DNA of 52,230 nt from Macrostomum lignano (GCA_002269645.1 NIVC01003249.1:1-52230), one strand, 5' to 3'; shown: positions 3-50,497, numbered from the stretch's first letter. Notes: generated from the letters alone by a model not told the origin. Program-made: numbers and translations.

Positions 3-8943
<8,941 letters not shown>

Positions 8944-15500: not shown

Positions 15501-18500
15501 AGCTTCTACTTCGACTTGAGCTTCTGCTGAAGCTTCTGCTTTGGTTTCTGCTTCTTCTAGGGCTTCTGCTTCTGCTAAAGCTTCTGCTTCGACTTCTGCT
15601 TCTTGTGCTTCTGCTGAGGCTTCTGTTAAGGTTTCTGCCAAGGAAGCCTCTATGTTTGCTTCGCTCCTTGTAGTGAACAGGAGCGAAGCGAACATTGAGT
15701 CTTCCTTGGTTGCTGCTAAGGCTTCTGCTTTTGCTTCGGTTTCTACTTTGGCTTCTGCTTCTGATGTCGCTTCTGCTGTTGTCGCTTCTGTTTCTACTTC
15801 TGCCGCTCTTGTCATTTTGTTTCTTGCTGTTCATATTTTTGATTCCGCTACTTCTTTTGGTTTTGTCACGGCTGTCTTTAAATTCAGTTTCGTTTCTAAA
15901 ACCATGCGCGCTCGAGCCTTCGTTTTTTGCGCTGCTGTTTCTGCTTCTTGTTCCACCGCTCCTGGGTTCTACATGTCTGCTTTCTCTGCGGCTCTCAGTG
16001 TTTCCTGTTGAGTTTACGGATTCTCGATTGTCCCTGTTAGGCCCTGCAGAGGCAGGCGAAGGCTGCAGGCCGCCAGATCGAGACGAGGGCGGTGGTCGCT
16101 TGCGGGTCGCTCTACTAGAAGCTGGAATTTATGAAAGTTTGGCATAATTGAAGCCTCTACTATTATCCAAAACTTTATTACCGAAAATAGCAAAAAGTCA
16201 TCAGAGAAACCAGCAACAGGGGTGCCAGCCACGGAATCTCAGCAACTCTCCACTTGACCCATGACATCTCAGCAACTCTCCACTTGCCCCATGACATCTC
16301 AGAAACTCTCCACTTGACCCATGACATCTCAGCAACTCTCCAATTGACCCATGACATCTCAGAAACTCTCAAATCGACCCATGACATCTCAGAAACTCTC
16401 AAATCGACCCATGACATCTCAGCAACTCTCCACTTGACCCATGACATCTCAGCAACTCTCCACTTGCCCCATGACATCTCAGCAACTCTCCACTTGACCC
16501 ATGACATCTCAGCAACTCTCCACTTGACCTATGACATCTCAGCAACTCTCCAATTGACCAATGACATCTCAGAAACTCTCAAATCGACCCATGACATCTC
16601 AGCAACTCTCCACTTGCCCCATGACATCTCAGCAACTCTCCACTTGACCCATGATCTCAGCAACTCTCCACTTGACCTATGACATCTCAGCAACTCTCCA
16701 ATTGACCCATGACATCTCAGCAACTCTCCAATTGACCCATGACATCTCAGAAACTCTCAAATCGACCCATGACATCTCAGCAACTCTCCACTTGACCCAT
16801 GACATCTCAGCAACTCCCTCTTGAGCTCTATGGCATCTCAGTCAGCAGCTCCCTCTTGAGCTCTATGGCATCTCAGCAACTCCCTCTTGAGCTCTATGGC
16901 ATCTCAGCAACTCCCTCTTGAGCTCTATGGCATCTCAGCAACTCCCTCTTGAGCTCTATGGCATCTCAGCAACTCCCTCTTGAGCTCTATGGCATCTCAG
17001 CAACTCCCTCTTGAGCTCTATGGCATCTCAGCAACTCCCTCTTGAGCTCTATGGCATCTCAGCAACTCCCTCTTGAGCTCTATGGCATCTCAGCAACTCC
17101 CTCTTGAGCTCTATGGCATCTCAGTCAGCAGCTCCCTCTTGAGCTCTATGGCATCTCAGCAACTCCCTATTGAGCTGTATGGCATCTCAGCAACTTCCTC
17201 TCGAGCTCTATGGCATCTCAGCAGCTCCCTCTTGAGCTCTATGGCATCTCAGTCAGCAGCTCCCTCTTGAGCTCTATGGCATCTCAGCAACTCCCTATTG
17301 AGCTGTATGGCATCTCAGCAACTTCCTCTCGAGCTCTATGGCATCTCAGCAGCTCCCTCTTGAGCTCTATGGCATCTCAGCAACTCCCTCTTGAGCTCTA
17401 TGGCATCTCAGTCAGCAGCTCCCTCTTGAGCTCTATGGCATCTCAGCAACTCCCTCTTGAGCTCTATGGTATCTCAGCAAATCCCTCTTGAGCTCTATGG
17501 CATCTCAGCAGCTCCCTCTTGACCTCTATGGCATCTCAGCAACTCCCTCTTGAGCTCTATGGCATCTCAGCAACTCCCTCATGGGCTCTATGGCATCTCA
17601 GCAACTCCCTCTTGAGCTCTATGGCATCTCAGCAACTCCCTCTTGAGCTCTATGGCATCTCAGCAACTCCCTCATGGGCTCTATGGCATCTCAGCAACTC
17701 CCTCTCGAGCCATGTCATCTCAGAAACTCCCCCCCGATATCTCAGCTATTACCCTTTATTACTCTTGAGAGCCCTGGCCTAACCCAAACCCTAGCTTCTT
17801 GATTAGTACACTCTTATTTTACTCACTGGTTGTCGTTCTTGTACGGAATCAAACAAGCATCAAACAAACTTACCTAATTGTCTGTTTCTACCGCGAGGTG
17901 GCTGTTGTCGATTTGGTTCGATAACTAAAATACGTCGCAAGGTTTCATATGATCACTTGTGCACTGAACATCATCACGGTATTTGTGAAAAATATCTAAA
18001 ATGCCACTTACAGACAGGCTGTGGCACCGGTATTTTAGCTCTATCGAGTTTCTTAGCTGTCAATGAAAAGATGAAAGCAAACGTTTTTGGTAGAATTTTT
18101 TATGATGCAAAATAATTAGGAACTGAAAAAACTGATAGGAACAGTTTTGACTGCTATAAGGACAAAACTGTGTTCCTATAAAATGCCTCTCTGGATACGA
18201 TAACTTTAGCAATTAAAAACCGAATACTAAGCTTTAACAGTCGACAATTAACCAGTAAGAAGCAGTGTCTTGAAGTGGGAAAATCGGGACATACAAATGC
18301 ACTACACTTCGTCATTGCTTACAACAGGGGTTGGCTGATTTTTTTACCTGTTTTTTTGGTCATGGGTCAATTTTTTTGGCCAAATGATGAAACCAGCTAA
18401 TGGCGCGGGCCAGATGAGAGAAGAAAGGAGAGGGAATACGAGAGGAGAGTGGAGAGAAGAGAGAGGGAGAGAGGAGAGGAGAGGGAAGAGGGGGAAGAGG

Positions 18501-19633
18501 AGAGGGGGGAAGAGATGGGGAGAAACGAGAGGGTGGGAGGAGAGGAGAGAAGAAGGCGAAAGAAGAGAGGAGAGACACGTTCGTACGTGTAAAGCTTTCT
18601 CAATGATTGAACAAACGTGCGCAGAAACTCCTCTGCCGAGGACCGTACCTTTCCTTGTGCATTCGCTAATAGCCGACTCGATAAGTTTTTTTGCGGGCAC
18701 GGTTACAATGGCATTCGCTCTGCAGTTCTCCTGCAGATACTGAATCGGGGTTTTCCCAAAACTGTCCCTAATTCGAGGATCGGTGCCGCTATTCAGCAGC
18801 ATCGCCTGCAATTTGCCGCTTTGCTCAACCTTGACGATGTACCGTTGGCACAGGTAAAGCGTGTGCAAAGGTGTTCTGCCATACCTGTCAATCTTGTTCA
18901 CACTTGCACCTTTTCGGCGAACCAAGTCGGCCATGTCTGCAATCTCCTCAGTGCTGTAGTAGCATGAAGACAGGAGATGAAGAGCTGTAAAGCCATCCCC
19001 TTTTCTCATCACCATCTGAAAGTCAAAATCCGACCAGTGCTCCATCAGGACCTCCAGAACCTGCTTCGGGCTGTAGCAGCGCAGCTCTTCTTTCATTTTG
19101 CGCCTCGACATCTGCTGCAGCCCAAGAAACAGCAGCTGGAAAGAGTTGCAGCCTTGCGAGTTGACTACGTCCTTGACAATGAAGCCTTCTAGAGCTGACT
19201 GATGCCGAACAACTTCTGCGTCACCCATCCAGCAAGCCGTGAGAAACTTGAATTTATTGAATTCGCCAGCAGCATCCTCCTCATATAAGAATTCAATTAG
19301 CATTTTACGAAACTCTCTTTTGCACCTGCTCAATAAGCCAAGATCCTCGGCTAAGTAAGTGGGATCGCCGCCAAACTCGAGTATTAACTTCCCAGCCTCT
19401 GTCTTGTTGTACCTGGCAGCAAGAATTAGCATTGTCCAGCCCAGGTGGTTCACGGGTTTGTTCACTATTCCTGGGTTGGCTTCCAACTTTTTCCTAATAT
19501 TGTTTAAAAAGGTGGTGTTGATGTATTCTCCGTCTTGACTTCGGGTTATCCAATCTATGAGACTGCGAGCCACTTCAAAAGAAATTGAGTCATTGTCTCC
19601 TTCCCGCTGATTTTGGTCTCTGGCGCTTATCAT
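9597..19633 (-). CDS. Ankyrin-repeat protein with long disordered RS (Arg/Ser) domain; exons 19633-18649, 17924-17874, 16121-15102, 14791-14734, [14619-14591], 14474-14370, 14018 (or 13947)-13846, 11653-11528, 11230-11135, 11052-10957, 10587-10365, 9657-9597
   Basis: ATG 19633 is directly preceded by an in-frame TGA. Ankyrin motifs [69 protein letters not shown]. The 1020-nt exon 16121-15102 is stop-free in the RS frame ([20 protein letters not shown] repeats). All listed junctions are GT..AG and phase-consistent, giving 2994 nt (997 aa) or 2952 nt (983 aa). Some sites are weak (AAG acceptor at 11654, GTTGT donor at 10956), so the distal exons are less certain than the ankyrin and RS exons. 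Confidence 0.65.
9690..10077. repeat. C-rich simple repeat (CCCCTG/CCCCTCT units), G-rich on the minus strand
   Basis: Almost pure pyrimidine tract on +; lies in the last modelled intron of the ankyrin/RS gene. Confidence 0.95.
11690..13712. repeat. 40-bp minisatellite, about 50 copies
   Basis: Consensus TCTGAGGTGACGCCACTTCATTTGGGTGAGTGTCATTCCA; stays in 40-bp register; no spacers; stops are hit in all frames. Confidence 0.97.
16236..17725. repeat. Compound 30-bp then 31-bp minisatellite
   Basis: ATGACATCTCAGCAACTCTCCACTTGACCC (30 bp) to about 16810, then CTCTATGGCATCTCAGCAACTCCCTCTTGAG (31 bp); shared core CATCTCAGCAACTC; intronic. Confidence 0.95.
18416..18576. repeat. GA-rich low-complexity tract
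   Basis: Nearly all purines on +; inside the first modelled intron of the ankyrin gene, which explains the SLLS/PLLS tail of the ORF-track protein. Confidence 0.85.
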
Positions 19634-33868: not shown

Positions 33869-34815
33869 GAAGGAATGGCATACAGACAGGGCATACAGAC
33901 AGGGCATACAGACACTGCATACAGACATGGCATACAGACACTGCGTACAGACAGTGCGTACAGACAGGGCATACAGACAGGGCATACAGACAGGGGATAC
34001 AGACAGGGCATACAGACAGGGCATACAGACAGGGCATACAGACAAGGCATACAGACAGGGCATACAGACAGGGCATACAGACAGGGGATACAGACAGGGC
34101 ATACAGACACTGCATACAGACACTGCATACAGACAGAGCATACAGACATGGCATACAGACACTGCGTACAGACAGGGCATACAGACAGGGCATACAGACA
34201 GGGGATACAGACAGGGCATACAGACACTGCATACAGACAGGGCATACAGACAGGGCATACAGACACTGCATACAGACAGGGCATACAGACAGGGCATACA
34301 GACACTGCATACAGACACTGCATACAGACAGGGCATACAGACAGGGCATGCAGACATGGCATACAGACACTACATACAGACAGGGCATACAGACAGGGCA
34401 TGCAGACACTGCATACAGACAGGGCATACAGACAGGGCATACAGACGGGATACAGACAGGGCATACAGACACTGCACACAGACAGGGCATACAGACAGGG
34501 CATGCAGACACTGCATACAGACAGGGCATACAGACAGGGCATGCAGACATGGCATACAGACAGGGCATACAGACAGGGCATGCAGACACTGCATACAGAC
34601 AGGGCATACAGACAGGGCATGCAGACACTGCATACAGACAGGGCATACAGACAGGGCATACAGACAGGGCATGCAGACACTGCATACAGACAGGGCATAC
34701 AGACAGGGCATACAGACAGGGCATGCAGACATGGCATACAGACACTGCATACAGACACTGCATACAGACAGGGCATACAGACAGGGCATACAGACAGGGG
34801 ATACAGACAGGGCAC
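33869..34815. repeat. 13-bp CA-rich minisatellite
   Basis: CATACAGACAGGG / CATACAGACACTG, about 70 units, ending about 55 nt before a TTTTTCAG acceptor (34865-34872) upstream of the hnRNP L-like ATG. Confidence 0.95.
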
Positions 34816-34982
34816 TTTCCCCATATAGTTAAGTATAACAATTTTAATGTTACTAATTAATGCATTTTTCAGTTACTGTCAGCTCAGTGCAGCTTCAGTC
34901 TATCAGTTCAAATCAGTTCCAATAATCAAGTAATAAACAATAATCTATTGTCAGCCCGAACTACTAATTAGCTAAAATAATC

Positions 34983-40869
<5,887 letters not shown>

Positions 40870-40990
40870 AATTTTAGCCGCTGAATGGTCGCTAAGCTGG
40901 GATTCACCTGCGACGGCAAAGGGTGGCTGACTGTCTTTACAGATTTGACTTTGTGCAGTGCTTTTGGTTTGACTGACTAGTGTCATTTTT

Positions 40991-41512
40991 ATGGATCCCA
41001 CCTCATGGATCCCATCGATCCGATGGATCCCACCCCTTGGATCCCACCCCATGGATCCCACCCCATGGATCCCACCCCATGGATCCCACCCTATGGACCC
41101 CACCCGATGGAGGATCCCACTCAATGAATCCCACCCCATGAATCCCACCCCATGGATCCCACCCCATAGATCCCACCCGATGGAGGATCCCACCCCATGA
41201 ATCCCACCCCATGGATCCCACCCCATGGACCCCACCCGATGTTGGATCCCATCCGTATATCCCACCCTTTGAATCCCACCTTTTGGATCCCACCCTATAA
41301 ATCCCATCCTATGGATCCCACCCATATCCCATCCTTTGAATCCCATTCTTTGAATCCCATTCTTTGAATCCCATTCTATGGATCCCACCCTATGAATCCC
41401 ACCCTATGAATCCCACCCCATGGATCCCACCCATTGGATCCCGCTCAATGGATCCCATCCAGATCCCACCTAATGGATCCCGTCCTATAGATCTCGCCCA
41501 ATGGATCGCATC
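40991..41512. repeat. 14-bp minisatellite downstream of the HNRNPL stop
   Basis: ATG(G/A)ATCCCACCCC units. Confidence 0.92.
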
Positions 41513-42242
41513 CAACAACTGTTATTCCACCCGTCACGTATTTTTTAGTATCTGGCATCAAAATTGTCTCTGAATTTTTAATAACTTCGCATTTCATCTG
41601 CCCCGTGTATATTCGATAAAGCAAGTTTTGTTGCTTTCTTAGTAAGAAACAGGCAACTTTAGTCGGGAATGAATTTTCCAAGTTAAAAATGCAGCAGGAA
41701 ACGATAAACCAGTCCGTCTTGGGAATATCTTGTTTTTTAGGTATCATTTAATTTTCTATACTATATTACAACTTATATGTACCTTTATTGTCTGCTGTAT
41801 ACTTTTAGTAGTGCATGCTGTTACTATTATTGTAATATTAGTTGAAAAAGTAACCAGTCCGAATTAGTAAAGCTTACTATGTCAGATAAAATGCTGTTCA
41901 AAAATAATTTTTGTTCGATTTCAACATTGCGCTGTACATTTAAAAAAGACGTTTTTTACTTCTTTTTTCAGTCGCTTGTCGCCGTTGTTTTATTGGTTTC
42001 GTTTAACCGCGTCGCGTGTTTAATCTCTATCTGATCAGCAAATAAACTAGCAAAATGCCCCCCCCCCATTTAAACAGTTTGTCAACTGACTTCATTGAAG
42101 TTTGACGTTTTTTCGGGCCGTATGGACTATTTTATTTAGTTAAACTTGATTAAGAATAAAAGTTCTAGTATGTAAATTATTGGTATTGGGATACTTATAA
42201 AGGTTGCTTCGATAGGGTACATGCATTATCAAAAATCCTACT

Positions 42243-42427
42243 TAAGACGATATGTATCGAAAGCTATAATTAGACGATATGTATCGAAACCTATATTTAG
42301 ACGATATGTATCGAATGCTATATTTAGCCGATATGTATCGAAGGCTATATTTAGACGTTATGTAATGTATCGAAATTTATTTCTAACCGATATGTATTGA
42401 AAGGTATATTTGGCCAATACGTATCGT
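42243..42427. repeat. Short array (~6 x ~28 bp) of the quasi-palindrome CGATA-TG-TATCG upstream of ECH1
   Basis: TTAGACGATATGTATCGAA..CTATA repeated; single copies recur in both ECH1 introns. Confidence 0.8.
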
Positions 42428-42452
42428 AAAGTTCATCACACTACTCCCGCAG

Positions 42453-44066
42453 GCTGCCGCCCCTCGCCTCCTCGCCAGTGTCCGAGCACTAGCTGCCAGC
42501 GCATCCCGTCGGCGACACCTGTGCTCCAGTGCCGGCAGCGCCATGCCCGACCCGGCCGCCGTGTTTGGCCAGCTCACCCATGTCCGGGTGACTCAACCGT
42601 CCGAATTTGTCCGACACATTGTGCTGTGCCGGCCTGATCGACTCAACTCCATGACCTGGGCTTTTTTCGACGAAATCGGCCGCTGCTTTGACGCAATCGG
42701 CGAAGATCCCGACTGTCGGGTTGCGGTGCTGTCAGCTGAAGGCAAGCATTTTACGGCCGGACTTGACCTGGTCGATGCGGCCCAAATGTTGGGTGGCTCT
42801 AATCCGGATCAGGTGGGTGTTAAATCTACTGGGTGTAAATTTTTAACACTGCTATTGACACGATTCTAATCCGATATGTAGTGATAAAAACTCTGTAAAG
42901 CAAAAAACGATTGGCTTTATTACGAGTATTCATTGGTACTGAGGTGATGCGTCAGTATTTTGCTTTAGTGGTCCTGGGTTCGAATCTCAATGGTCATTAT
43001 GATATTTCCTTCAAGAGGTTTTACTGACCTAATCAATGGTTTACCGACTACCGCTGCCAAAGCTAAATTAAACATTACGCTCGTAGCAACGCCATTTAAT
43101 ACGCAAAGATTTATTATAGCCGATATGTAGCGAAGTAAACTTTATAAAGCAAAAATCAGTACTGCAATTCCTAAACCACAGGACCCAGCACGCAAGGCGG
43201 CTGAAATTCGCCGGACGCTGTTCCGCCTACAGGCGGGTCTCTCAGCGCTGGAGCGCTGTAGCAAGCCCGTGATTGCGGCAATTCACGGCGGCTGCATCGG
43301 TGGCGGAGTTGATCTGGTAGCGGCTGCCGACATTCGCTATTGCAGTTCCGATGCGTTCTTCTCGGTTAAAGAGGTGCGTGTTTTTTATTTGTAAATATTT
43401 CGATGCATATTGTCCCGACTTAAAAGTCAGTTTAAAGTTCTTTTGGTTATTAAAAATCACGTTAGATAAACATTCTGTAATTCTTTTGACTTTTGTAATT
43501 ATAATTTTTTCGATACATATCGGCATAAAATGTTCTGTTATTGAAGCAAAAAATGCTTTGCAATATGTTATTTCGATACATATAACTACTCTGTCATCAG
43601 CTCAGAGTTCGGTGATTGATCCGTCAAAAACTATTTTTTCGATACATATCGTCACTAAAATATATTCTAAATTACCCAGGTAGACCTGGGCCTGGCAGCG
43701 GATCTGGGCTCCCTGCAGCGGCTCCCAAAGCTGCTCGGCAGCGCCAGCCTGCTAGCCGAACTCACCTTCACCGGGCGTCGTCTGCCAGCTGAGGAGGCGC
43801 ACCGGGTCGGCCTGGTTAGTCGCGTCCTGGACGATCGCGACCGGCTGCTGGCGGCCGCCCTGTCCCTGGCCAGCGACATCGCCGCCAAGAGCCCGGTGGC
43901 TGTACAGGCCGCCAAACGGTCCCTACTGTTCGCCCGCGATCATCCGGTGGCCGAAGGTCTGGCGCAGATTGCCGCGGAGAATGCCGCCATGCTGCAGAGC
44001 GAAGACGTGGCCAGAGCGGTGGCCGCCTCGCTTAGCAAAGAGAAGCCCAGCTTTGCTAAGCTTTGA
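42453..44066 (+). CDS. ECH1: Delta(3,5)-Delta(2,4)-dienoyl-CoA isomerase (crotonase family); exons 42453 (first genomic ATG 42543)-42812, 43182-43373, 43680-44066
   Basis: LCRPDRLNSM, GKHFTAGLDL, KPVIAAIHGGCIGGGVDL, VKEVDLGLAADLGSLQRLPK (catalytic Glu and Asp positions conserved), KSPVAVQ, RDHPVAEGL; C-terminal AKL (PTS1). Two phase-0 GT..AG introns. Confidence 0.95.
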
Positions 44067-44653: not shown

Positions 44654-44735
44654 CGACGAGGATGGGATTCGAACTCACGCGGGGAAACCCCAATGGATTA
44701 GCAGTCCATCGCCATAACCACTCGGCCACCGCGTC
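44654..44735 (-). tRNA. tRNA-Ser-GCT: tRNA-Ser(GCT), 82 nt, with two stem mismatches
   Basis: GACGCGGTGGCCGAGTGGTTATGGCGATGGACTGCTAATCCATTGGGGTTTCCCCGCGTGAGTTCGAATCCCATCCTCGTCG: A and B boxes, anticodon stem ATGGA/TCCAT with loop CTGCTAA, long variable arm, TTTTTT terminator 4 nt downstream. Confidence 0.9.
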
Positions 44736-45569
44736 TGCTATCAGTAGCCCGGGCCGCGCGTAAAATAATTTGTCTGCATGAGCCACGTGCGCACGGCTGC
44801 GTGAAGTTGAGATAAGATTTGAATCGGTTTTTATTAATTTAATGTACTTTATAGCCAACTTTATTGCTCAGTTAAAAAAATTAGAATATGATCCAAGAGA
44901 ACTTAAACTACATGTGTGCTGACTGACGCGGGGTTTTGGCATTGGCACTCGACGAGGCCCCTTGACTTTCTAATCACGCACACTTTCTGTGCCTTACGTT
45001 TGCCGTCATGACTGTGAAAATCATTGATTGTTTTTAAATCAAGACACTGAAACTCTCTTACCATTAAAACTAGCTCATACACCAGCTGTGCATTCACTGA
45101 AGAGCATTATTGATTTATTTTACTAGACTGAGGCGTACAGCGAGTTTATAAAATAATAAAACAAGTAGGCACACTCTGTGCAGGTGCGCGCCTATTAGTA
45201 GTCATGAGAACGCGTTGCTATAAAATTCAAATCAGCCAGACAGATGCAGACAAGACTCCCCGTTAGTTAAAGCGGAATATAATTTCTGATATATCGAAAT
45301 CAACAAATTATAGAAGAGGCAAATATATCTGTTAGAATATAGAAGCGGTATTTGAAAGCCTGAAAATATGAATTAATTAATTTTTTAGGCAATTTAGCAA
45401 CGCACAGAGCAATTGAAACTTTCTGCAAGTGCAGTGACAAATGGCGCACATAACCGCTACTATTTACACGTTAAGCTCTTAAGCAAAGACATACAGTTTT
45501 CTTTTGCAAATGGAAAGTAAAACATCATAAAATGAAAATGTGGTTACCTAAAGCCGGGGTACTCTGGGG

Positions 45570-46595
45570 GAGAGAGTGTACATCTGAGGGGTGGGCTGGG
45601 AGGAGTGTACATCTGAGGGGTAGGCTGGGGGAGAGAATGTACATCTGAGGGGTAGGCTGAGGGAGAGAATGTACATCTGAGGGGTAGGCTGGGGGAGAGA
45701 ATGTAGATCTGAAGGCTAGGCTGGGGGGAGAATGTACATCTGAGGGGTAGGCTGGGAGACTGTACATCTAAATGGTAGGCTGGGGGAGAATGTACATCTG
45801 AGGGGTAGGCTGGGGGACAGTGTACATCTAAAGGGTACGCTGGGGGAGAGTGTACATCTGAGGGGTAGGCTGGGGAGAGTGTACATCTGAAGGGTAGGCT
45901 GGGGGAGAGAATGTACATCTGAGGGGTAGGCTGAGGGAGAGAATGTAGATCTGAAGGCTAGGCTGGGGGAGAGAATGTACATCTGAGGGGTGGGCTGGGG
46001 GGAGTGTACATCTGAGGGGTAGGCTGGGGGACAGTGTACATCTAAAGAGTAGGCTGGGGGAGAGTGTACATCTGAGGGGTAGGCTGGGGAGAGTGTAAAT
46101 CTGAGGGGTAGGCTGGGGGAGTGTACATCTGAGGGGTAGGCTGGGGAGAGTGTACATCTGAGGGGTAGGCTGGGGAGAGTGTACATCTGAGGGTAGGCTA
46201 TGGGAGAGAATGTACATCTGAAAGCTAGGCTTGGGGAGAGAGTGCACATCTGAAGGCTAGGGGGGAGAGAGTGCACATCTGAAGGCTAGGGGGGAGAGAG
46301 TGCACATCTGAAGGCTAGGGGGAGAGAGTGCACATCTGAAGGCTAGGGGGGAGAGAGTGCACATCTGAAGGCTAGGGGGAGAGAGTGCACATCTGAAGGC
46401 TAGGGGGGAGAGAGTGCACATCTGAAGGCTAGGGGGGAGAGAGTGCACATCTGAAGGCTAGGGGGGAGAGAGTGCACATCTGAAGGCTAGGGGGAGAGAG
46501 TGCACATCTGAAGGCTAGGGGGGAGAGAGTGCACATCTGAAGGCTAGGGGGAGAGAGTGCACATCTGAAGGCTAGGGGGGAGAGAGTGTACATCT
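45570..46595. repeat. Compound G-rich minisatellite (~33-bp then ~29-bp units)
   Basis: GTACATCTGAGGGGTAGGCTGGGGGAGAGAAT changing at about 46240 to GTGCACATCTGAAGGCTAGGGGGGAGAGA. Confidence 0.93.
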
Positions 46596-47004
46596 GTGTA
46601 CAACTGGCAATATATTTTATTATAACTCTAATCACGCGAGCATCAATAATTTACTGAACGAAAATTATCTTCATTATAGGATCATAGAATCTGATGTACA
46701 TGGATAATCTGATATACACAGAGATAAGAACAAACTAAAAATGAAACCTATGAATCGGATAAAGCAGTGAGCACGCTCGACACGGCTGAAAGACCGGAAG
46801 CTGCATTACAAAAATAACATTAGGAGACGAACGCGACAAAAAAGCACAACGCCAAAGACAGGCGCATTTTTTTAATTCTATCAATAAGCTATCAGTAAAT
46901 AAATAATATATATAATATATATGGATATACGCACACCACAAACTACAGCTCAACGTGGCATTTATTAGTGGAAAGTACAGAATAAGAAACTTATCTAACA
47001 CGAT

Positions 47005-47560
47005 GTCTATGGCCAATACTGCCCGACCCTGGATCCTGAGCAACACACAACCTCCAGCTGTCTATGGCCAATACTGCCCGACCCTGGATCCTAAGCAACA
47101 CACAACCTCCAGCTGTCTATGGCCAATACTGCCCGACCCTGGATCCTGAGCAACACACAACCTCCAGCTGTCTGGCCAATACTGCCCGACCCTGGATCCT
47201 GAGCAACACACAACCTCCAGCTGTCTATGGCCAATACTGCCCGACCCTGGATCCTGAGCAACACACAACCTCCAGCTGTCTATGGCCAATACTGCTCGAC
47301 TCTGGATCCTGAGCAACACACAACCTCCAGCTGTCTATGGCCAATACTGCCCGACCCTGGATCCTGAGCAACACACAACCTCTAGCTGTCTATGGCCAAT
47401 ACTGCCCGACCCTGGATACTGAGCAACACACAACCTCCAGCTGTCTATGGCCAATACTGCCCGACCCTGGATCCTGAGCAATACACAACCTCCAGCTGTC
47501 TATGGCCAATACTGCCCGACCCTGGATCCTGAGCAATACACAACCTCCAGCTGTCTATGG
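47005..47560. repeat. 55-bp minisatellite, about 10 copies, just past the PTEN stop
   Basis: TCTATGGCCAATACTGCCCGACCCTGGATCCTGAGCAACACACAACCTCCAGCTG. Confidence 0.95.
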
Positions 47561-47675
47561 TCAATTCTCAGCTGCCTGAACAGTACCCAGCAGAGGTAAA
47601 GGCACAAGCTGCCAATCTCAATCCAAATCTTCGTCACCACAGCAGCCTGGCTCCAGCTCTATCCGAGGCCGTGAA

Positions 47676-50497
47676 TCAGTTCCATTGCCATCCACCGGGC
47701 AGTTGCCCCCCCAGGAGTCGGACCGGAATCGACGACGACGAAGCCGACAGCGGGCCGGAGGCGACGCGGGTGTCGACGAGAGCTCCGGCGCAGATTGGTG
47801 ATGACGCAGTCGCAGCAGCTGTGGAGCAGCCGGCGCTGGACGAGGCGGGTGCGGAGCAGTAGGAGAAGGGCCGGTAGAGCCCGTCAGTCGGGTTGTCCTC
47901 GTCCGAGCTGTTCGGATCCGGCAGCTCGAATTGGAGGGTCACCTGGTTGCGGGCCGGGTTTGGGAGAGGATTAGGATACGACTGCGGTGGGATGGGCGTC
48001 CATCTGGGAACAAGTGCCCATCCTGACCTCTGCTCTCCCTCTCTATCCCCCACTCTCCCTCTCTATCCCCCACTCTTCCTCTCTATCCCCCACTCTCCCT
48101 CTCCTACACCCACTCTTCCTCTCTATCCCCCACTCTCCCTCTCCTACTCCCACTCTCCCTCTCTACCCCCCACTCTCCCTCTCCTACTCCCACTCTCCCT
48201 CTCTACCCCCCACTCTCCCTCTCTACCCCCCTCTCCCTCTCTACCCCCACTCTCCCTCTCTACCCCCACTCTCCCTCTCTACCCCCCACTCTCCCTCTCT
48301 ACCCCCACTCTCCTCTCTCCTACCCCCACTCTCCCTCTCCTACCCCACTCTCCCTCTCCTACCCCCACTCTCCCTCTCCTACCCCCACTCTCCCTCTCCT
48401 ACCCCCACTCTCCCTCTCTACCCCCACTCTCTCTCTCCTACCCCCACTCTCCCTCTCTACCCCCCACTCTCCCTCTCTACCCCCCACTCTCCCTCTCCTA
48501 CTCCCACTCTCCTCTCTACCCCCACTCTCTCTCTCCTACCCCCACTCTCCCTCTCCTACTCCCACTCTCCCTCTCTACCCCCACTCTCCCTCTCCTACCC
48601 CCACTCTCCCTCTCCTACCCCCACTCTCCCTCTCTACCCCCACTCTCTCTCTCCTACCCCCACTCTCCCTCTCTACCCCCCACTCTCCCTCTCTACCCCC
48701 CACTCTCCCTCTCCTACTCCCACTCTCCCTCTCTACCCCCACTCTCCCTCTCTACCCCCCACTCTCCTCTCTATTCCCCACACTCCCTCTCTATCCCTTC
48801 ACTCTCCCTCTCTATCCCCCACTCTCCCTCTCCTACCCCCACTCTCCCTCTCCTACCCCCACTCTCTCTCTCCTACCCCCACTCTCCCTCTCCTACCCCA
48901 CTCTCCCTCTCTACCTCCACTCTCTCTCTCCTACCCCACTCTCCCTCTCTACCCCCCACTCTCCCTCTCTACCCCCACTCTCCCTCTCCTACTCCCACTC
49001 CCTCTCTACCCCCACTCTCCCTCTCTACCCCCCACTCTCCCTCTCTATTCCCACACTCCTCTCTATCCCTTCACTCTCCCTCTCTATCCCCACTCTCCCT
49101 CTCTATCCCCACTCTCTCTCTCCTACCCCACTCTCCCTCTCTATCCCCCACTCTCCCTCTCCTACTCCCACTCTCCCTCTCTACTCCCCACTCTCCCTCT
49201 CCTACCCCCACTCTCCCTCTCTACCCCACTCTCCCTCTCTACCCCCACTCTCCCTCTCCTACCCCCACTCTCCCTCTCTACCCCACTCTCTCTCTCCTAC
49301 CCCCACTCTCTCTCTCCTACCCCCCACTCTCCCTCTCTACTCCCCACTCTCTCTCTCCTACCCCCCACTCTCCTCTCCTACTCCCCACTCTCCCTCTCTA
49401 CCCCCACTCTCTCTCTCCTACTCCCCACTCTCCCTCTCCTACTCCCCACTCTCCCTCTCCTACTCCCACTCTCCCTCTACCCCCACTCTCCCTCTCCTAC
49501 TCTCTCCTCTCTACTCCCTCTCCCTCTCCTACTCCCCACTCTCCCTCTCTACCCCCACTCTCCTCTCCTACTCCCACTCTCCCTCTCTACTCACCCCCAC
49601 TCTCTCTCCTACCCCCACTCTCCCTCTCCTACTCCCACTCTCTCTCTCCTACCCCACTCTCCTCTCCTACTCCCACTCTCCCTCTCTACCCCCACTCTCC
49701 TCTCCTACTCCCACTCTCTCTCTCCTACCCCCACTCTCCTCTCCTACTCCCACTCTCCCTCTCTATCCCCACTCTCCCTCTCTATCCCCACTCTCCCTCT
49801 CTATCCCCACTCTCCCTCTCTATCCCCACTCTCCCTCTCTATCCCCCACTCCCCCTCTCCATCCCCACTCTCCCTCTCTATCCCCAATCTCTCCCTCTCT
49901 ACCCCCCTACTCTCCCCCAGAAGAGAGCACTCAGCGCAGAGCTCACGCAGAAGGTGTCGGGGAACATTTTATCCTTGCAGGCCTTGTCCAGCTCAGACTT
50001 AGTCAGCGTCAAGTACAGATATTTGTCATCCTGCTCGTCCGGCGCCAGGCCAGCGGCCTCTCGTTTCCGACTTCGCCAGAGCGCACCCGGAGTGTCTTGC
50101 GGCTGGTTCAAGACAAAGAAGGTGTTGAACCAGCAGTGAAACAGCTCCTCGCACAGGGCCAACACTTTGCTCCGATTGTAGAAGACAATCTTCACGTCGC
50201 CGTTGACTTTAATTGGCGCGGACATTGGGATGATGGCTGACTGCTGGCCCCGCTTCGGCTCGCACATTTCCGACTCCCGATGGGCCGGTGAGCGCTACGG
50301 TTGTCCTGGTGGAAGTCGCGGACCAGCTTCTGGCAGCGGAAGAACAGGCAGCAGCCTCCGCTAGGCGGGTAGGAGGGCAGGCCGCCCTCTACGCTGACCG
50401 AGCGAAGCACCAAGGGGCAGGACTCAACCACCAGGTTGTGCCGGAGCACGTGCGCGTAATAGTACACGTAGCGTCGCTGGGACGGGATGGTGACGCC
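47676..50497 (-). CDS. PTEN: PTEN-like phosphatase, 3' part only (end of phosphatase domain, C2 domain, tail); exons 50497-49947 and 47942-47676; apparent frameshift near 50276-50278
   Basis: GVTIPSQRRYVYYY, GDVKIVF, LFHCWFNTFFV, YLYLTLTKSELDKACKD match PTEN. The acceptor before GVTIPSQ and the junction FC|VTLQF match human PTEN intron positions. The HCKAGKGR P-loop exon was not found and is presumably beyond 52230. Confidence 0.9.
48030..49918. repeat. ~19-bp CT-rich minisatellite in the last PTEN intron (G-rich on the PTEN sense strand)
   Basis: CCCCACTCTCCCTCT(C)CTA units over about 1.9 kb; source of the 748-aa and 671-aa Pro/Leu/Ser ORFs. Confidence 0.95.

What the first reader, a model, noticed from the sequence alone, without database searches (positions are those of the whole stretch)
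42384..42545. ECH1 mitochondrial presequence lacks a genomic ATG: start codon probably donated by the spliced leader, giving splicing-controlled dual targeting
Seen: after the acceptor CTACTCCCGCAG (42451-42452 = AG) the frame reads AAAPRLLASVRALAASASRRRHLCSSAGSA and then the first ATG (42543, MPDP...). These 30 codons are Arg/Ala/Ser/Leu-rich with no acidic residue, a typical mitochondrial presequence with an R-2/R-3-like RRRHLC/S site. In frame upstream there is no ATG before TAA 42384-42386, and I found no convincing upstream coding exon. The junction is phase 0. Known: flatworm spliced leaders end in AUG, which can act as initiator Met, and mammalian ECH1 has both a presequence and PTS1. 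Inference: SL addition yields M-AAAPRLL... (mitochondrial), while non-trans-spliced or leaky-scanned mRNA starts at 42543 and goes to peroxisomes via AKL. Trans-splicing would then be an organelle-targeting switch.
Basis: partly seen in the sequence, partly recalled or inferred. Interest (0 to 1): 0.8.

Follow-up and report, generated by a model that had tools for sequence, protein, structure and literature searches.

The report
Spliced-leader-donated start codon for flatworm ECH1
In the flatworm Macrostomum lignano, this copy of the fatty-acid enzyme gene ECH1 has no start codon of its own for its mitochondrial targeting peptide and almost certainly borrows the AUG at the end of the trans-spliced leader, a mechanism already known in flatworms; the proposed "targeting switch" remains untested.

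Summary
The window is Macrostomum lignano contig NIVC01003249.1. The gene is a three-exon ECH1 (dienoyl-CoA isomerase) ending in the PTS1 AKL.

GenBank annotates its CDS as 5'-partial, starting exactly at 42453, the first base after the CAG acceptor. The M. lignano spliced leader ends in ATG.

The 30 codons before the first genomic ATG look coding. They are 73% GC against about 30% in all flanking non-coding DNA. They also contain the conserved metazoan ECH1 presequence-end motif (SVRALAASA scores 13.2 bits; 3 of 20,000 shuffles reach this).

No upstream in-frame ATG or credible cis exon exists. In a second genomic copy the three bases CAG read ATG at the same position. That is either a real homeologue difference or an artefact of polishing the assembly with RNA-seq reads. 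Either reading implies mRNA carrying AUG|GCUGCC.

So the core inference, that the spliced leader donates the initiator Met, is well supported, though indirectly. It is a new example of a mechanism known since 2006.

The claim that trans-splicing acts as an organelle switch has no support. An unspliced leader would carry many upstream ATGs, and the gene may lie downstream in a polycistron. Leaky scanning to AUG 42543 is the only plausible route to a peroxisome-only form.

The parts
40665..40869 (+). Last coding exon and TGA stop (40867-40869) of the upstream same-strand RRM-protein gene (start ATG at 34983). The exon start coordinate is approximate.
42041..42160 (+). The only two AATAAA hexamers (42041, 42155) between the RRM stop and the ECH1 acceptor. 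They are candidate poly(A) signals of the upstream gene, 290-410 nt before the acceptor.
   Evidence: inference; poly(A) site not verified
42245..42431 (+). 27-nt tandem array (AGACGATATGTATCGAAAGCTATATTT) in the outron, rich in ATG triplets.
42384..42386 (+). In-frame TAA closing the reading frame upstream of the acceptor.
42441..42452 (+). Pyrimidine-rich tract plus CAG: the inferred SL trans-splice acceptor (AG = 42451-42452). CAG 42450-42452 reads ATG in paralog L002.
   Evidence: acceptor motif [T/C]TNCAG from PMC8629364
42453..42542 (+). 30 codons of N-terminal presequence with no genomic start codon. 73% GC.
42477..42503 (+). SVRALAASA, the best match (13.2 bits) to the conserved ECH1 presequence-end motif [A/S]-[V/L]-R-A-[M/L]-S-S-S-[A/G]. 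It resembles an R-3 cleavage site.
42507..42533 (+). RRRHLCSSA, a second and weaker copy of the same motif (4.4 bits). Compare QRRHLCSAS in ortholog P0025.
42543..42545 (+). First genomic ATG (context GCC ATG C). Candidate internal start giving a 282-aa form that lacks the presequence.
42453..42812 (+). ECH1 exon 1 (donor GTGGGT).
   Evidence: identical to GenBank PAA52397.1
43182..43373 (+). ECH1 exon 2.
43680..44066 (+). ECH1 exon 3. PTS1 A-K-L codons 44055-44063, TGA 44064-44066.

Best explanation
The window copy of M. lignano ECH1 (delta3,5-delta2,4-dienoyl-CoA isomerase) starts with a spliced-leader trans-splice acceptor at 42451-42452. The mature mRNA is the 35-nt SL (CGGTCTCTTACTGCGAAGACTCAATTTATTGCATG) joined directly to GCTGCCGCC... 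The SL's terminal AUG is therefore in phase 0 with exon 1 and is the only available initiator for the first 30 codons.

Translation from it gives a 313-aa precursor, M-AAAPRLLASVRALAASASRRRHLCSSAGSA-MPDP...AKL. This carries an N-terminal mitochondrial-type presequence and a C-terminal PTS1, the signal pair typical of animal ECH1.

Shown here: the sequence anatomy, the 5'-partial CDS annotated at the acceptor, homology of the extension to ortholog presequences, the absence of a cis start codon, and ATG at the same position in a paralog.

Inferred: that SL reads actually end at 42453, that the SL AUG is the initiator used, and where the protein goes.

The SL AUG has U at -3 and no other AUG lies before 42543. 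Some leaky scanning to AUG 42543 (context GCCAUGC) could therefore also make a presequence-less, peroxisome-only form. That part is speculative.
For: (1) Organism and SL. The protein is 100% identical to M. lignano PAA52397.1 on NIVC01003249.1, and window coordinates equal contig coordinates. The SL ends in ATG, and about 30% of M. lignano genes are trans-spliced (PMC8629364).

(2) The GenBank CDS is 'partial' and begins at 42453, the base after CAG. The same holds in paralog PAA50481.1. The annotation pipeline cut transcript 5' ends at peaks of SL-containing reads (PMC5730564).

(3) GC is 73% in 42453-42542, against 33% in the outron, 29-37% in introns and 30% in the 3' flank. Codon log-likelihood is best in frame 0 (+3.1, -2.2 and -12.8 bits for the three frames).

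(4) A position-specific scoring matrix (PSSM) was built from the aligned N-termini of 93 full-length orthologs. SVRALAASA scores 13.2 bits, inside the ortholog interquartile range of 8.9-18.5. This score is reached by 108 of 20,000 permutations and 3 of 20,000 nucleotide-shuffle translations. The other two frames score below zero against an earlier version of this matrix.

(5) With the SL Met the protein is 313 aa, with 41 residues before the conserved core. Long ortholog forms are 300-315 aa. Starting at M31 would leave 10 residues.

(6) No in-frame ATG lies between TAA 42384 and 42543. None of the 30 ATG...|GT phase-0 candidates in 40870-42452 has a GT[A/G]AG donor.

(7) Paralog L002 reads CCCGATGGCTGCC where the window and L003 read CCCGCAGGCTGCC, giving an intact 313-aa ORF beginning MAAAPRLL....

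(8) Precedent: the flatworm SL AUG serves as initiator (Cheng et al. 2006, as cited in PMC9851317, PMC12582326 and PMC3510090).
Against: No RNA read, cDNA or peptide could be examined, so use of the acceptor rests on the annotation and on inference. The acceptor (CCGCAG) only partly fits the reported [T/C]TNCAG motif. Presequence-like composition is partly a by-product of GC richness (17% of shuffles are acid-free with at least 5 R/K). No targeting predictor could be run. The paralog ATG may be an assembly-polishing artefact (Pilon with RNA-seq reads). An older ML2 gene model (P0008) joins upstream RRM exons to this exon.
Confidence: 0.8

Rival explanations
1. The 90 nt after the acceptor are merely a 5' UTR. 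The real protein starts at ATG 42543 (282 aa, PTS1 only, peroxisomal), and the presequence-like reading is a GC-composition accident.
For: The open frame and the acid-free, Arg-rich composition are not rare for 73%-GC sequence. Short 281-287-aa 'isoform X2' ECH1 proteins are annotated in many animals. AUG 42543 has a good context.
Against: The motif match to ortholog presequences is significant. The other transcribed non-coding parts of this gene are about 30% GC, not 73%. If the SL is added here, its AUG is the first AUG, in frame and with no stop, so the extension would be translated anyway. Paralog L002 places an ATG exactly at the start of the extension.
Confidence: 0.07
2. A cis-spliced upstream exon supplies the ATG through the same acceptor. 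This could be a small undetected 5' exon, or exons of the upstream RRM gene read through as a fusion.
For: ML2 model P0008 (UniRef A0A1I8FP37) strings together RRM last-exon sequence (window 39578-39625 and 40688-40751) and ECH1 exon 1. Sharing of acceptors between cis- and trans-splicing is reported in parasitic flatworms (PMC12582326).
Against: P0008 is full of frameshifts and reads the RRM exons out of frame. The newer annotation ends the RRM CDS at a stop (40869) and starts ECH1 at the acceptor as a separate gene in the two copies where its full CDS is annotated. No ATG exon with a consensus donor exists in the spacer. The spacer is 33% GC and repeat-filled.
Confidence: 0.07
3. The window copy, with its near-twin L003, has lost its start codon (ATG to CAG) and is a decaying duplicate. 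The functional gene is the L002 homeologue with a genuine genomic ATG.
For: L002 as assembled has a complete ATG-initiated ORF. L003 carries a 2-bp deletion at the end of exon 2. With only two lineages the polarity of CAG versus ATG is undetermined.
Against: The window ORF is intact over 312 codons. At least one derived-looking replacement sits in L002: F310S in the conserved P-x-F-[S/A]-K-L tail. S177F is also L002-specific. CAG preceded by a pyrimidine run is a working acceptor, and the annotated CDS begins exactly there. The L002 ATG may itself be an artefact.
Confidence: 0.05

Closest known systems
[quoted passage not shown]
   Same: The SL ends in AUG. The AUG is in frame with the ORF. 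The conserved N-terminus can only be made if the SL AUG is the start. PMC9851317 reports that more than 40 S. mansoni cDNAs need it. PMC3510090 found 143 of 187 E. granulosus SL clusters full-length only with it.
   Different: This host is a free-living macrostomid. The donated Met heads an organelle presequence of a dual-signal enzyme. No experimental read or translation evidence was obtained here. The M. lignano papers read here do not discuss use of the SL AUG as a start.
Echinococcus granulosus thioredoxin glutathione reductase: alternative trans-spliced mRNAs encoding mitochondrial and cytosolic variants (Agorio et al. 2003, J Biol Chem 278:12920; PMC2873472)
   Same: It is a flatworm case where trans-spliced mRNAs from one gene differ in having an N-terminal mitochondrial leader, so SL processing is tied to compartment choice.
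   Different: There, both variants carry the SL and arise from two transcription starts and two acceptors. Here only one acceptor is evident and no second isoform has been seen.
Mammalian ECH1 / rat delta3,5-delta2,4-dienoyl-CoA isomerase (PDB 1DCI, 2VRE, 8SK6; Filppula et al. 1998, J Biol Chem 273:349)
   Same: Best structural-sequence hits, E = 3.6e-84 to 9.5e-83 over the whole crotonase core. N-terminal presequence plus C-terminal PTS1 (SKL there, AKL here). Dual mitochondrial and peroxisomal location of the rat enzyme is from my own knowledge of the cited paper.
   Different: The mammalian start codon is genome-encoded. The M. lignano presequence has Leu where most orthologs have the conserved Met of R-A-M-S-S-S.
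Alternative trans-splicing that adds or removes targeting signals in Trypanosoma brucei (Nilsson et al. 2010, cited in PMC9851317; isoleucyl-tRNA synthetase case, from my own knowledge)
   Same: SL site choice determines whether an N-terminal targeting peptide is encoded (cites 'alteration of signal peptides').
   Different: The trypanosome SL does not donate the AUG. The choice there is between two acceptors flanking a genomic AUG.
Alanine-glyoxylate aminotransferase: alternative transcription and translation starts giving mitochondrial (MTS) or peroxisomal (PTS1) forms
   Same: It is a peroxisome/mitochondrion enzyme in which inclusion of the first AUG decides the compartment (PMC8919083). 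This is the model for the proposed two-AUG scheme.
   Different: No trans-splicing is involved, and both AUGs are genomic.

Membership tests
SL-AUG-initiated ORFs of flatworms | The host's spliced leader ends in AUG | tested here: met
   The M. lignano SL is ...TTATTGCATG (PMC8629364). Host identity.
SL-AUG-initiated ORFs of flatworms | The gene's 5' end is an SL acceptor actually used (SL-bearing reads or cDNA) | not testable with these tools
   Indirect only. The GenBank 5'-partial CDS starts at the base after CAG in two copies, and the pipeline sets 5' ends at SL-read peaks. The junction scan of metagenome contigs found nothing.
SL-AUG-initiated ORFs of flatworms | The SL AUG is in frame with the main ORF with no intervening stop | tested here: met
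   Phase-0 junction, 312 sense codons to TGA.
SL-AUG-initiated ORFs of flatworms | The conserved N-terminus cannot be made from any genomic AUG | tested here: met
   No in-frame ATG lies between TAA 42384 and 42543. The conserved presequence motif lies at 42477-42533, upstream of 42543. No credible cis exon exists.
SL-AUG-initiated ORFs of flatworms | Translation demonstrably initiates at the SL AUG | not testable with these tools
   Needs ribosome profiling, N-terminomics or reporter constructs.
ECH1 / delta3,5-delta2,4-dienoyl-CoA isomerase (crotonase superfamily) | Crotonase fold domain, with dienoyl-CoA isomerases as closest relatives | tested here: met
   Pfam ECH_1, 1.1e-40. Top PDB hits are 1DCI, 8SK6 and 2VRE. 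49-56% identity to metazoan ECH1. GGGVDL and KEVDLGLAAD motifs are conserved in the alignment.
ECH1 / delta3,5-delta2,4-dienoyl-CoA isomerase (crotonase superfamily) | C-terminal PTS1 tripeptide | tested here: met
   -AKL at 44055-44063. Orthologs end in SKL or AKL.
ECH1 / delta3,5-delta2,4-dienoyl-CoA isomerase (crotonase superfamily) | N-terminal mitochondrial presequence | tested here: inconclusive
   Composition and hydrophobic moment fall within the ortholog range, and the conserved motif is present. No targeting predictor or localisation experiment was available.
Dual targeting by alternative (trans-)splicing or alternative initiation | Two mRNA or protein isoforms differing in the presequence | not tested
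   No transcript or protein data were available. There is only one candidate acceptor, and one internal AUG with a good context.
Downstream gene of an SL-resolved operon | A same-strand upstream gene at short (repeat-adjusted under 1 kb) distance, and a polycistronic precursor | tested here: inconclusive
   The RRM gene stop is at 40869, 1,583 nt upstream. About 700 nt of that is tandem repeat. AATAAA lies 290-410 nt before the acceptor. A fused ML2 model exists. The poly(A) site and the precursor were not verified.

The most novel reading that the evidence does not exclude
The CAG/ATG difference between homeologous ECH1 copies is real. One copy would encode its initiator Met in the genome, and the other would have converted the same three nucleotides into a trans-splice acceptor, outsourcing the Met to the spliced leader. 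A viable one-step intermediate exists (ATG <-> AAG <-> CAG). In the SL-dependent copy, the weak-context SL AUG and the strong-context AUG31 would split the enzyme between mitochondria and peroxisomes.
Probability: 0.3. Interest if true: 0.6.

Novelty: new member of a known kind. Interest (0 to 1): 0.35.

Why it matters
This is a clean, checkable example of a gene whose conserved N-terminus exists only after trans-splicing. It is in the one flatworm where stable transgenesis allows a direct test.

It also has a practical consequence. Genome annotations that strip the spliced leader label such genes '5' partial' and lose the initiator Met and, with it, the start of the targeting-peptide reading frame. 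Organelle proteomes predicted for M. lignano and other SL-using animals will therefore be systematically wrong for this class of genes.

If the paralog ATG is genuine, the locus would show how a start codon can move between the genome and the spliced leader without changing the protein. If it is an artefact, it flags a specific error mode of polishing assemblies with RNA-seq reads at trans-splice sites.

Tried and rejected
- Searched supplementary files of PMC5730564 and the paper library for the gene id (Mlig022011). Nothing found.
- Scanned JGI metagenome contigs for the SL-exon junction TTGCATGGCTGCCGCCCCTCGCC. No matches, which is uninformative because the collection is unlikely to hold this animal.
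- Searched with only the N-terminal 70 aa to surface short transcript-derived fragments. The word index returned 5 candidates and none scored, so the search was a technical failure.
- Looked up contigs for orthologs with similar presequences. P0025 was not on record. P0022 is an intronless gene on an unidentified ENA contig and gave no useful outgroup.
- Checked my recollection that S. mansoni phytochelatin synthase gets a mitochondrial Met from the SL. It was wrong: the paper found no trans-splicing.
- Looked for other NAG/ATG swaps among the three copies, to test for a systematic polishing artefact. Found only chance hits in repeats and AT-rich DNA. The only other annotated CDS start that could be checked (RRM gene) is a conventional ATG in all copies. 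The artefact question therefore stays open.
[quoted passage not shown] Absent. Rfam found only the tRNA.
- Rejected ORF openness and Arg/Ala richness as standalone evidence, because shuffles reproduce them often.

Full report
**What is in the sequence**

- 42441-42452 is CTACTCCCGCAG.
- The next 90 nt (42453-42542) read AAAPRLLASVRALAASASRRRHLCSSAGSA in frame with ATG 42543.
- The frame is closed upstream by TAA 42384-42386, with no in-frame ATG in between.
- There is no ATG in any frame between the acceptor and 42543.

Joining 42453-42812, 43182-43373 and 43680-44066 uses GT...AG introns with phase-0 junctions. It gives 312 codons ending A-K-L-stop.

**Identity**

The product has a crotonase domain (Pfam ECH_1, 1.1e-40). 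Its best solved relatives are rat and human delta3,5-delta2,4-dienoyl-CoA isomerase (1DCI, 8SK6, 2VRE; E about 1e-83).

It is 100% identical over its full length to GenBank PAA52397.1, 'hypothetical protein BOX15_Mlig022011g1, partial [Macrostomum lignano]'. That gene sits at 42453-44066 of contig NIVC01003249.1, so the window is the first 52,230 bases of that contig. The flatworm guess was right.

**Is the acceptor a spliced-leader site?**

I could not see reads, so the evidence is indirect.
- M. lignano has a single 35-nt SL, CGGTCTCTTACTGCGAAGACTCAATTTATTGCATG. It ends in ATG and is attached to about 30% of genes. The enriched acceptor motif is [T/C]TNCAG (PMC8629364).
- The Mlig_3_7 annotation set mRNA 5' ends at peaks of SL-containing reads, after trimming the SL, and then called ORFs with TransDecoder (PMC5730564).
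- A CDS flagged 5'-partial whose first base is the base after CAG is what that pipeline produces for an SL-spliced mRNA whose only start codon was trimmed away with the SL. This is seen both in this copy and in paralog PAA50481.1.

**Are the 30 codons really coding?**

Open-frame status and Arg/Ala/Ser richness are weak evidence. Of shuffles of these 90 nt, 69% are stop-free. Of those, 17% are acid-free with at least 5 basic residues. Three other observations are stronger.

1. Composition. The segment is 73% GC, like the rest of the CDS (63%). The outron is 33%, the introns 29-37% and the 3' flank 30%, and the change occurs exactly at 42452/42453. Codon log-likelihood also favours frame 0.

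2. Homology to ortholog presequences.
- I aligned the N-termini of 93 full-length metazoan ECH1 proteins. They share a motif at the end of the presequence, roughly [A/S]-[V/L]-R-A-[M/L]-S-S-S-[A/G] (R in 67 of 92, M in 74 of 93).
- A position-specific scoring matrix (PSSM) built only from the orthologs scores M. lignano SVRALAASA (42477-42503) at 13.2 bits. That is within the ortholog interquartile range of 8.9-18.5.
- Only 108 of 20,000 permutations of the same residues and 3 of 20,000 translated nucleotide shuffles reach this score.
- A second, weaker copy is RRRHLCSSA (42507-42533). Ortholog P0025 has QRRHLCSAS.

3. Length. With one added Met the protein is 313 aa, with 41 residues before the conserved core, like long ortholog forms of 300-315 aa. 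Starting at 42543 leaves 10 residues.

**Could a cis exon supply the ATG?**

The upstream neighbour on the same strand is an RRM-domain gene. Its ATG is at 34983 and its stop ends at 40869. The 1,583-nt spacer is 33% GC and is largely a 14-nt and a 27-nt tandem array.

Of 30 ATG-to-GT phase-0 segments in the spacer, none has the GT[A/G]AG donor typical of this genome.

An older ML2 model (P0008) does string RRM last-exon sequence to ECH1 exon 1. However, it reads the RRM exons out of frame and is full of frameshifts. I treat it as a hint of a polycistronic precursor rather than a real fusion protein.

**The paralogs**

The assembly holds three copies.
- The window and L003 (NIVC01000230.1) read CCCG-CAG-GCTGCC.
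- L002 (NIVC01003626.1) reads CCCG-ATG-GCTGCC. The three acceptor bases are replaced by a start codon in the same phase, giving an intact genome-encoded ORF MAAAPRLL...SSAKL of 313 aa.
- The 90-nt extension is identical in all three copies.
- All seven exonic differences (4 replacement, 3 silent) are L002-specific. They include F310S in the otherwise conserved P-x-F-[S/A]-K-L tail.
- L003 has a 2-bp deletion at the end of exon 2.

Adjacent double substitutions in unique sequence are rare here, about five per 16 kb aligned. One landing on this dinucleotide and producing AT is not a chance event. Two explanations remain.
- (a) A genuine homeologue difference. The site may be constrained to be either an acceptor or a start codon, and ATG <-> AAG <-> CAG is a path with viable intermediates.
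- (b) An artefact. The assembly was polished with Pilon using RNA-seq reads mapped by STAR, and the authors used end-to-end mapping elsewhere. Reads beginning with the last two or three SL bases could overwrite CA with AT in the copy that is uniquely mappable through the SNP at 42546.

I cannot decide between them and rate it roughly even. Either way the data imply mRNAs with AUG immediately 5' of GCUGCC, which is what the SL hypothesis predicts.

**Mechanism and its limits**

The best-supported reading has three steps.
1. SL trans-splicing occurs at 42452|42453.
2. The SL AUG initiates translation.
3. The product is a 313-aa precursor with an N-terminal presequence and a C-terminal PTS1.

The 'switch' part of the finding is not supported.
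- An untrans-spliced leader would contain 7 ATGs in its last 200 nt and 43 in the spacer, so it would be a poor mRNA for AUG 42543.
- The only AATAAA hexamers after the RRM stop lie 290-410 nt before the acceptor. This is consistent with ECH1 being the downstream gene of an SL-resolved polycistron, in which case trans-splicing would be obligatory rather than regulatory.
- From my own knowledge, animal ECH1 is dual-localised as a single polypeptide carrying both signals (Filppula et al. 1998; one search retrieved only its reference entry).

Leaky scanning is still possible. The SL AUG has U at -3. The next AUG is 42543, in the context GCCAUGC, and no AUG intervenes.

The Met of the R-A-M-S-S-S motif is conserved in 74 of 93 orthologs. 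Fish 'isoform X2' proteins start exactly at it. So a presequence-less second isoform may be an old feature of the family.

**Comparison with what is known**

- Use of the flatworm SL's terminal AUG as initiator was shown by Cheng et al. 2006. It has been surveyed in S. mansoni and E. granulosus.
- Trans-spliced mitochondrial and cytosolic variants of E. granulosus TGR are a compartment-related precedent.
- AGT is the classic two-start mitochondrion/peroxisome enzyme.
- The M. lignano trans-splicing paper does not discuss the SL AUG as a start.
- GenBank labels this gene partial.

This is therefore a new, well-defined member of a known class rather than a new mechanism.

**Verdict**

The core interpretation, an SL-donated initiator for the presequence, is supported at about 0.8. 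The targeting-switch claim is unsupported. Interest is moderate to low, and would rise if the CAG/ATG homeologue swap proves real.

Noticed in passing
L002 9998-10000 (NIVC01003626.1:38905-38907), equivalent to window 42450-42452: The paralogous ECH1 copy reads ATG where the window and the third copy read CAG. This gives a complete genome-encoded MAAAPRLL... ORF. It is either a real acceptor/start-codon swap between homeologues or a Pilon/RNA-seq polishing artefact carrying the last SL bases.
   Followed up: partly
window 42248-43651: The 14-mer CGATATGTATCGAA (up to 2 mismatches) occurs 10 times against 0.14 expected. All hits lie inside the ECH1 locus: a 27-nt tandem array in the outron (+), intron 1 (+), and intron 2 (inverted). 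Its function or origin is unknown (local satellite or MITE fragment?).
   Followed up: partly
L003 near 9720 (equivalent to window 43372-43373): The third ECH1 copy lacks the last two bases (AG) of exon 2, which would shift the frame. Only exon 3 is called as a gene there. It is either a pseudogenised duplicate or an assembly indel.
   Followed up: no
ortholog alignment; window equivalent 42477-42545: Metazoan ECH1 presequences end in a conserved R-A-M-S-S-S motif, with Met in 74 of 93 sequences. NCBI 'isoform X2' proteins of several fish begin exactly at that Met. This suggests a widespread alternative start producing a PTS1-only isoform. M. lignano has Leu there and a Met 8-18 residues later.
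   Followed up: partly
window 34983-40869 (+): A multi-RRM protein gene (Pfam RRM_1, RRM_5, RRM_10) lies upstream on the same strand, with introns packed with tandem repeats. An old ML2 gene model fuses its last exons to ECH1, hinting at a shared primary transcript.
   Followed up: partly
window 345-5831 and 6082-8274 (+): Two very long open frames encode 12 MAM domains and 10 LDL-receptor class A domains. This is a giant, almost intron-free MAM/LDLa repeat protein, cut off by the start of the contig.
   Followed up: no
window 44654-44735 (-): tRNA-Ser(GCT) gene about 590 nt downstream of the ECH1 stop, on the opposite strand (ARAGORN and Rfam agree).
   Followed up: yes
window 18344-19633 (-): A 429-aa open frame with ankyrin repeats, not examined further.
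   Followed up: no
window 34000-41514 and 45556-50000: Very dense short-period tandem arrays (13, 22-24, 4, 14 and 32 nt units). One stretch at 48-50 kb has a GC skew of -0.95. Copy number differs between the three paralogous loci.
   Followed up: no
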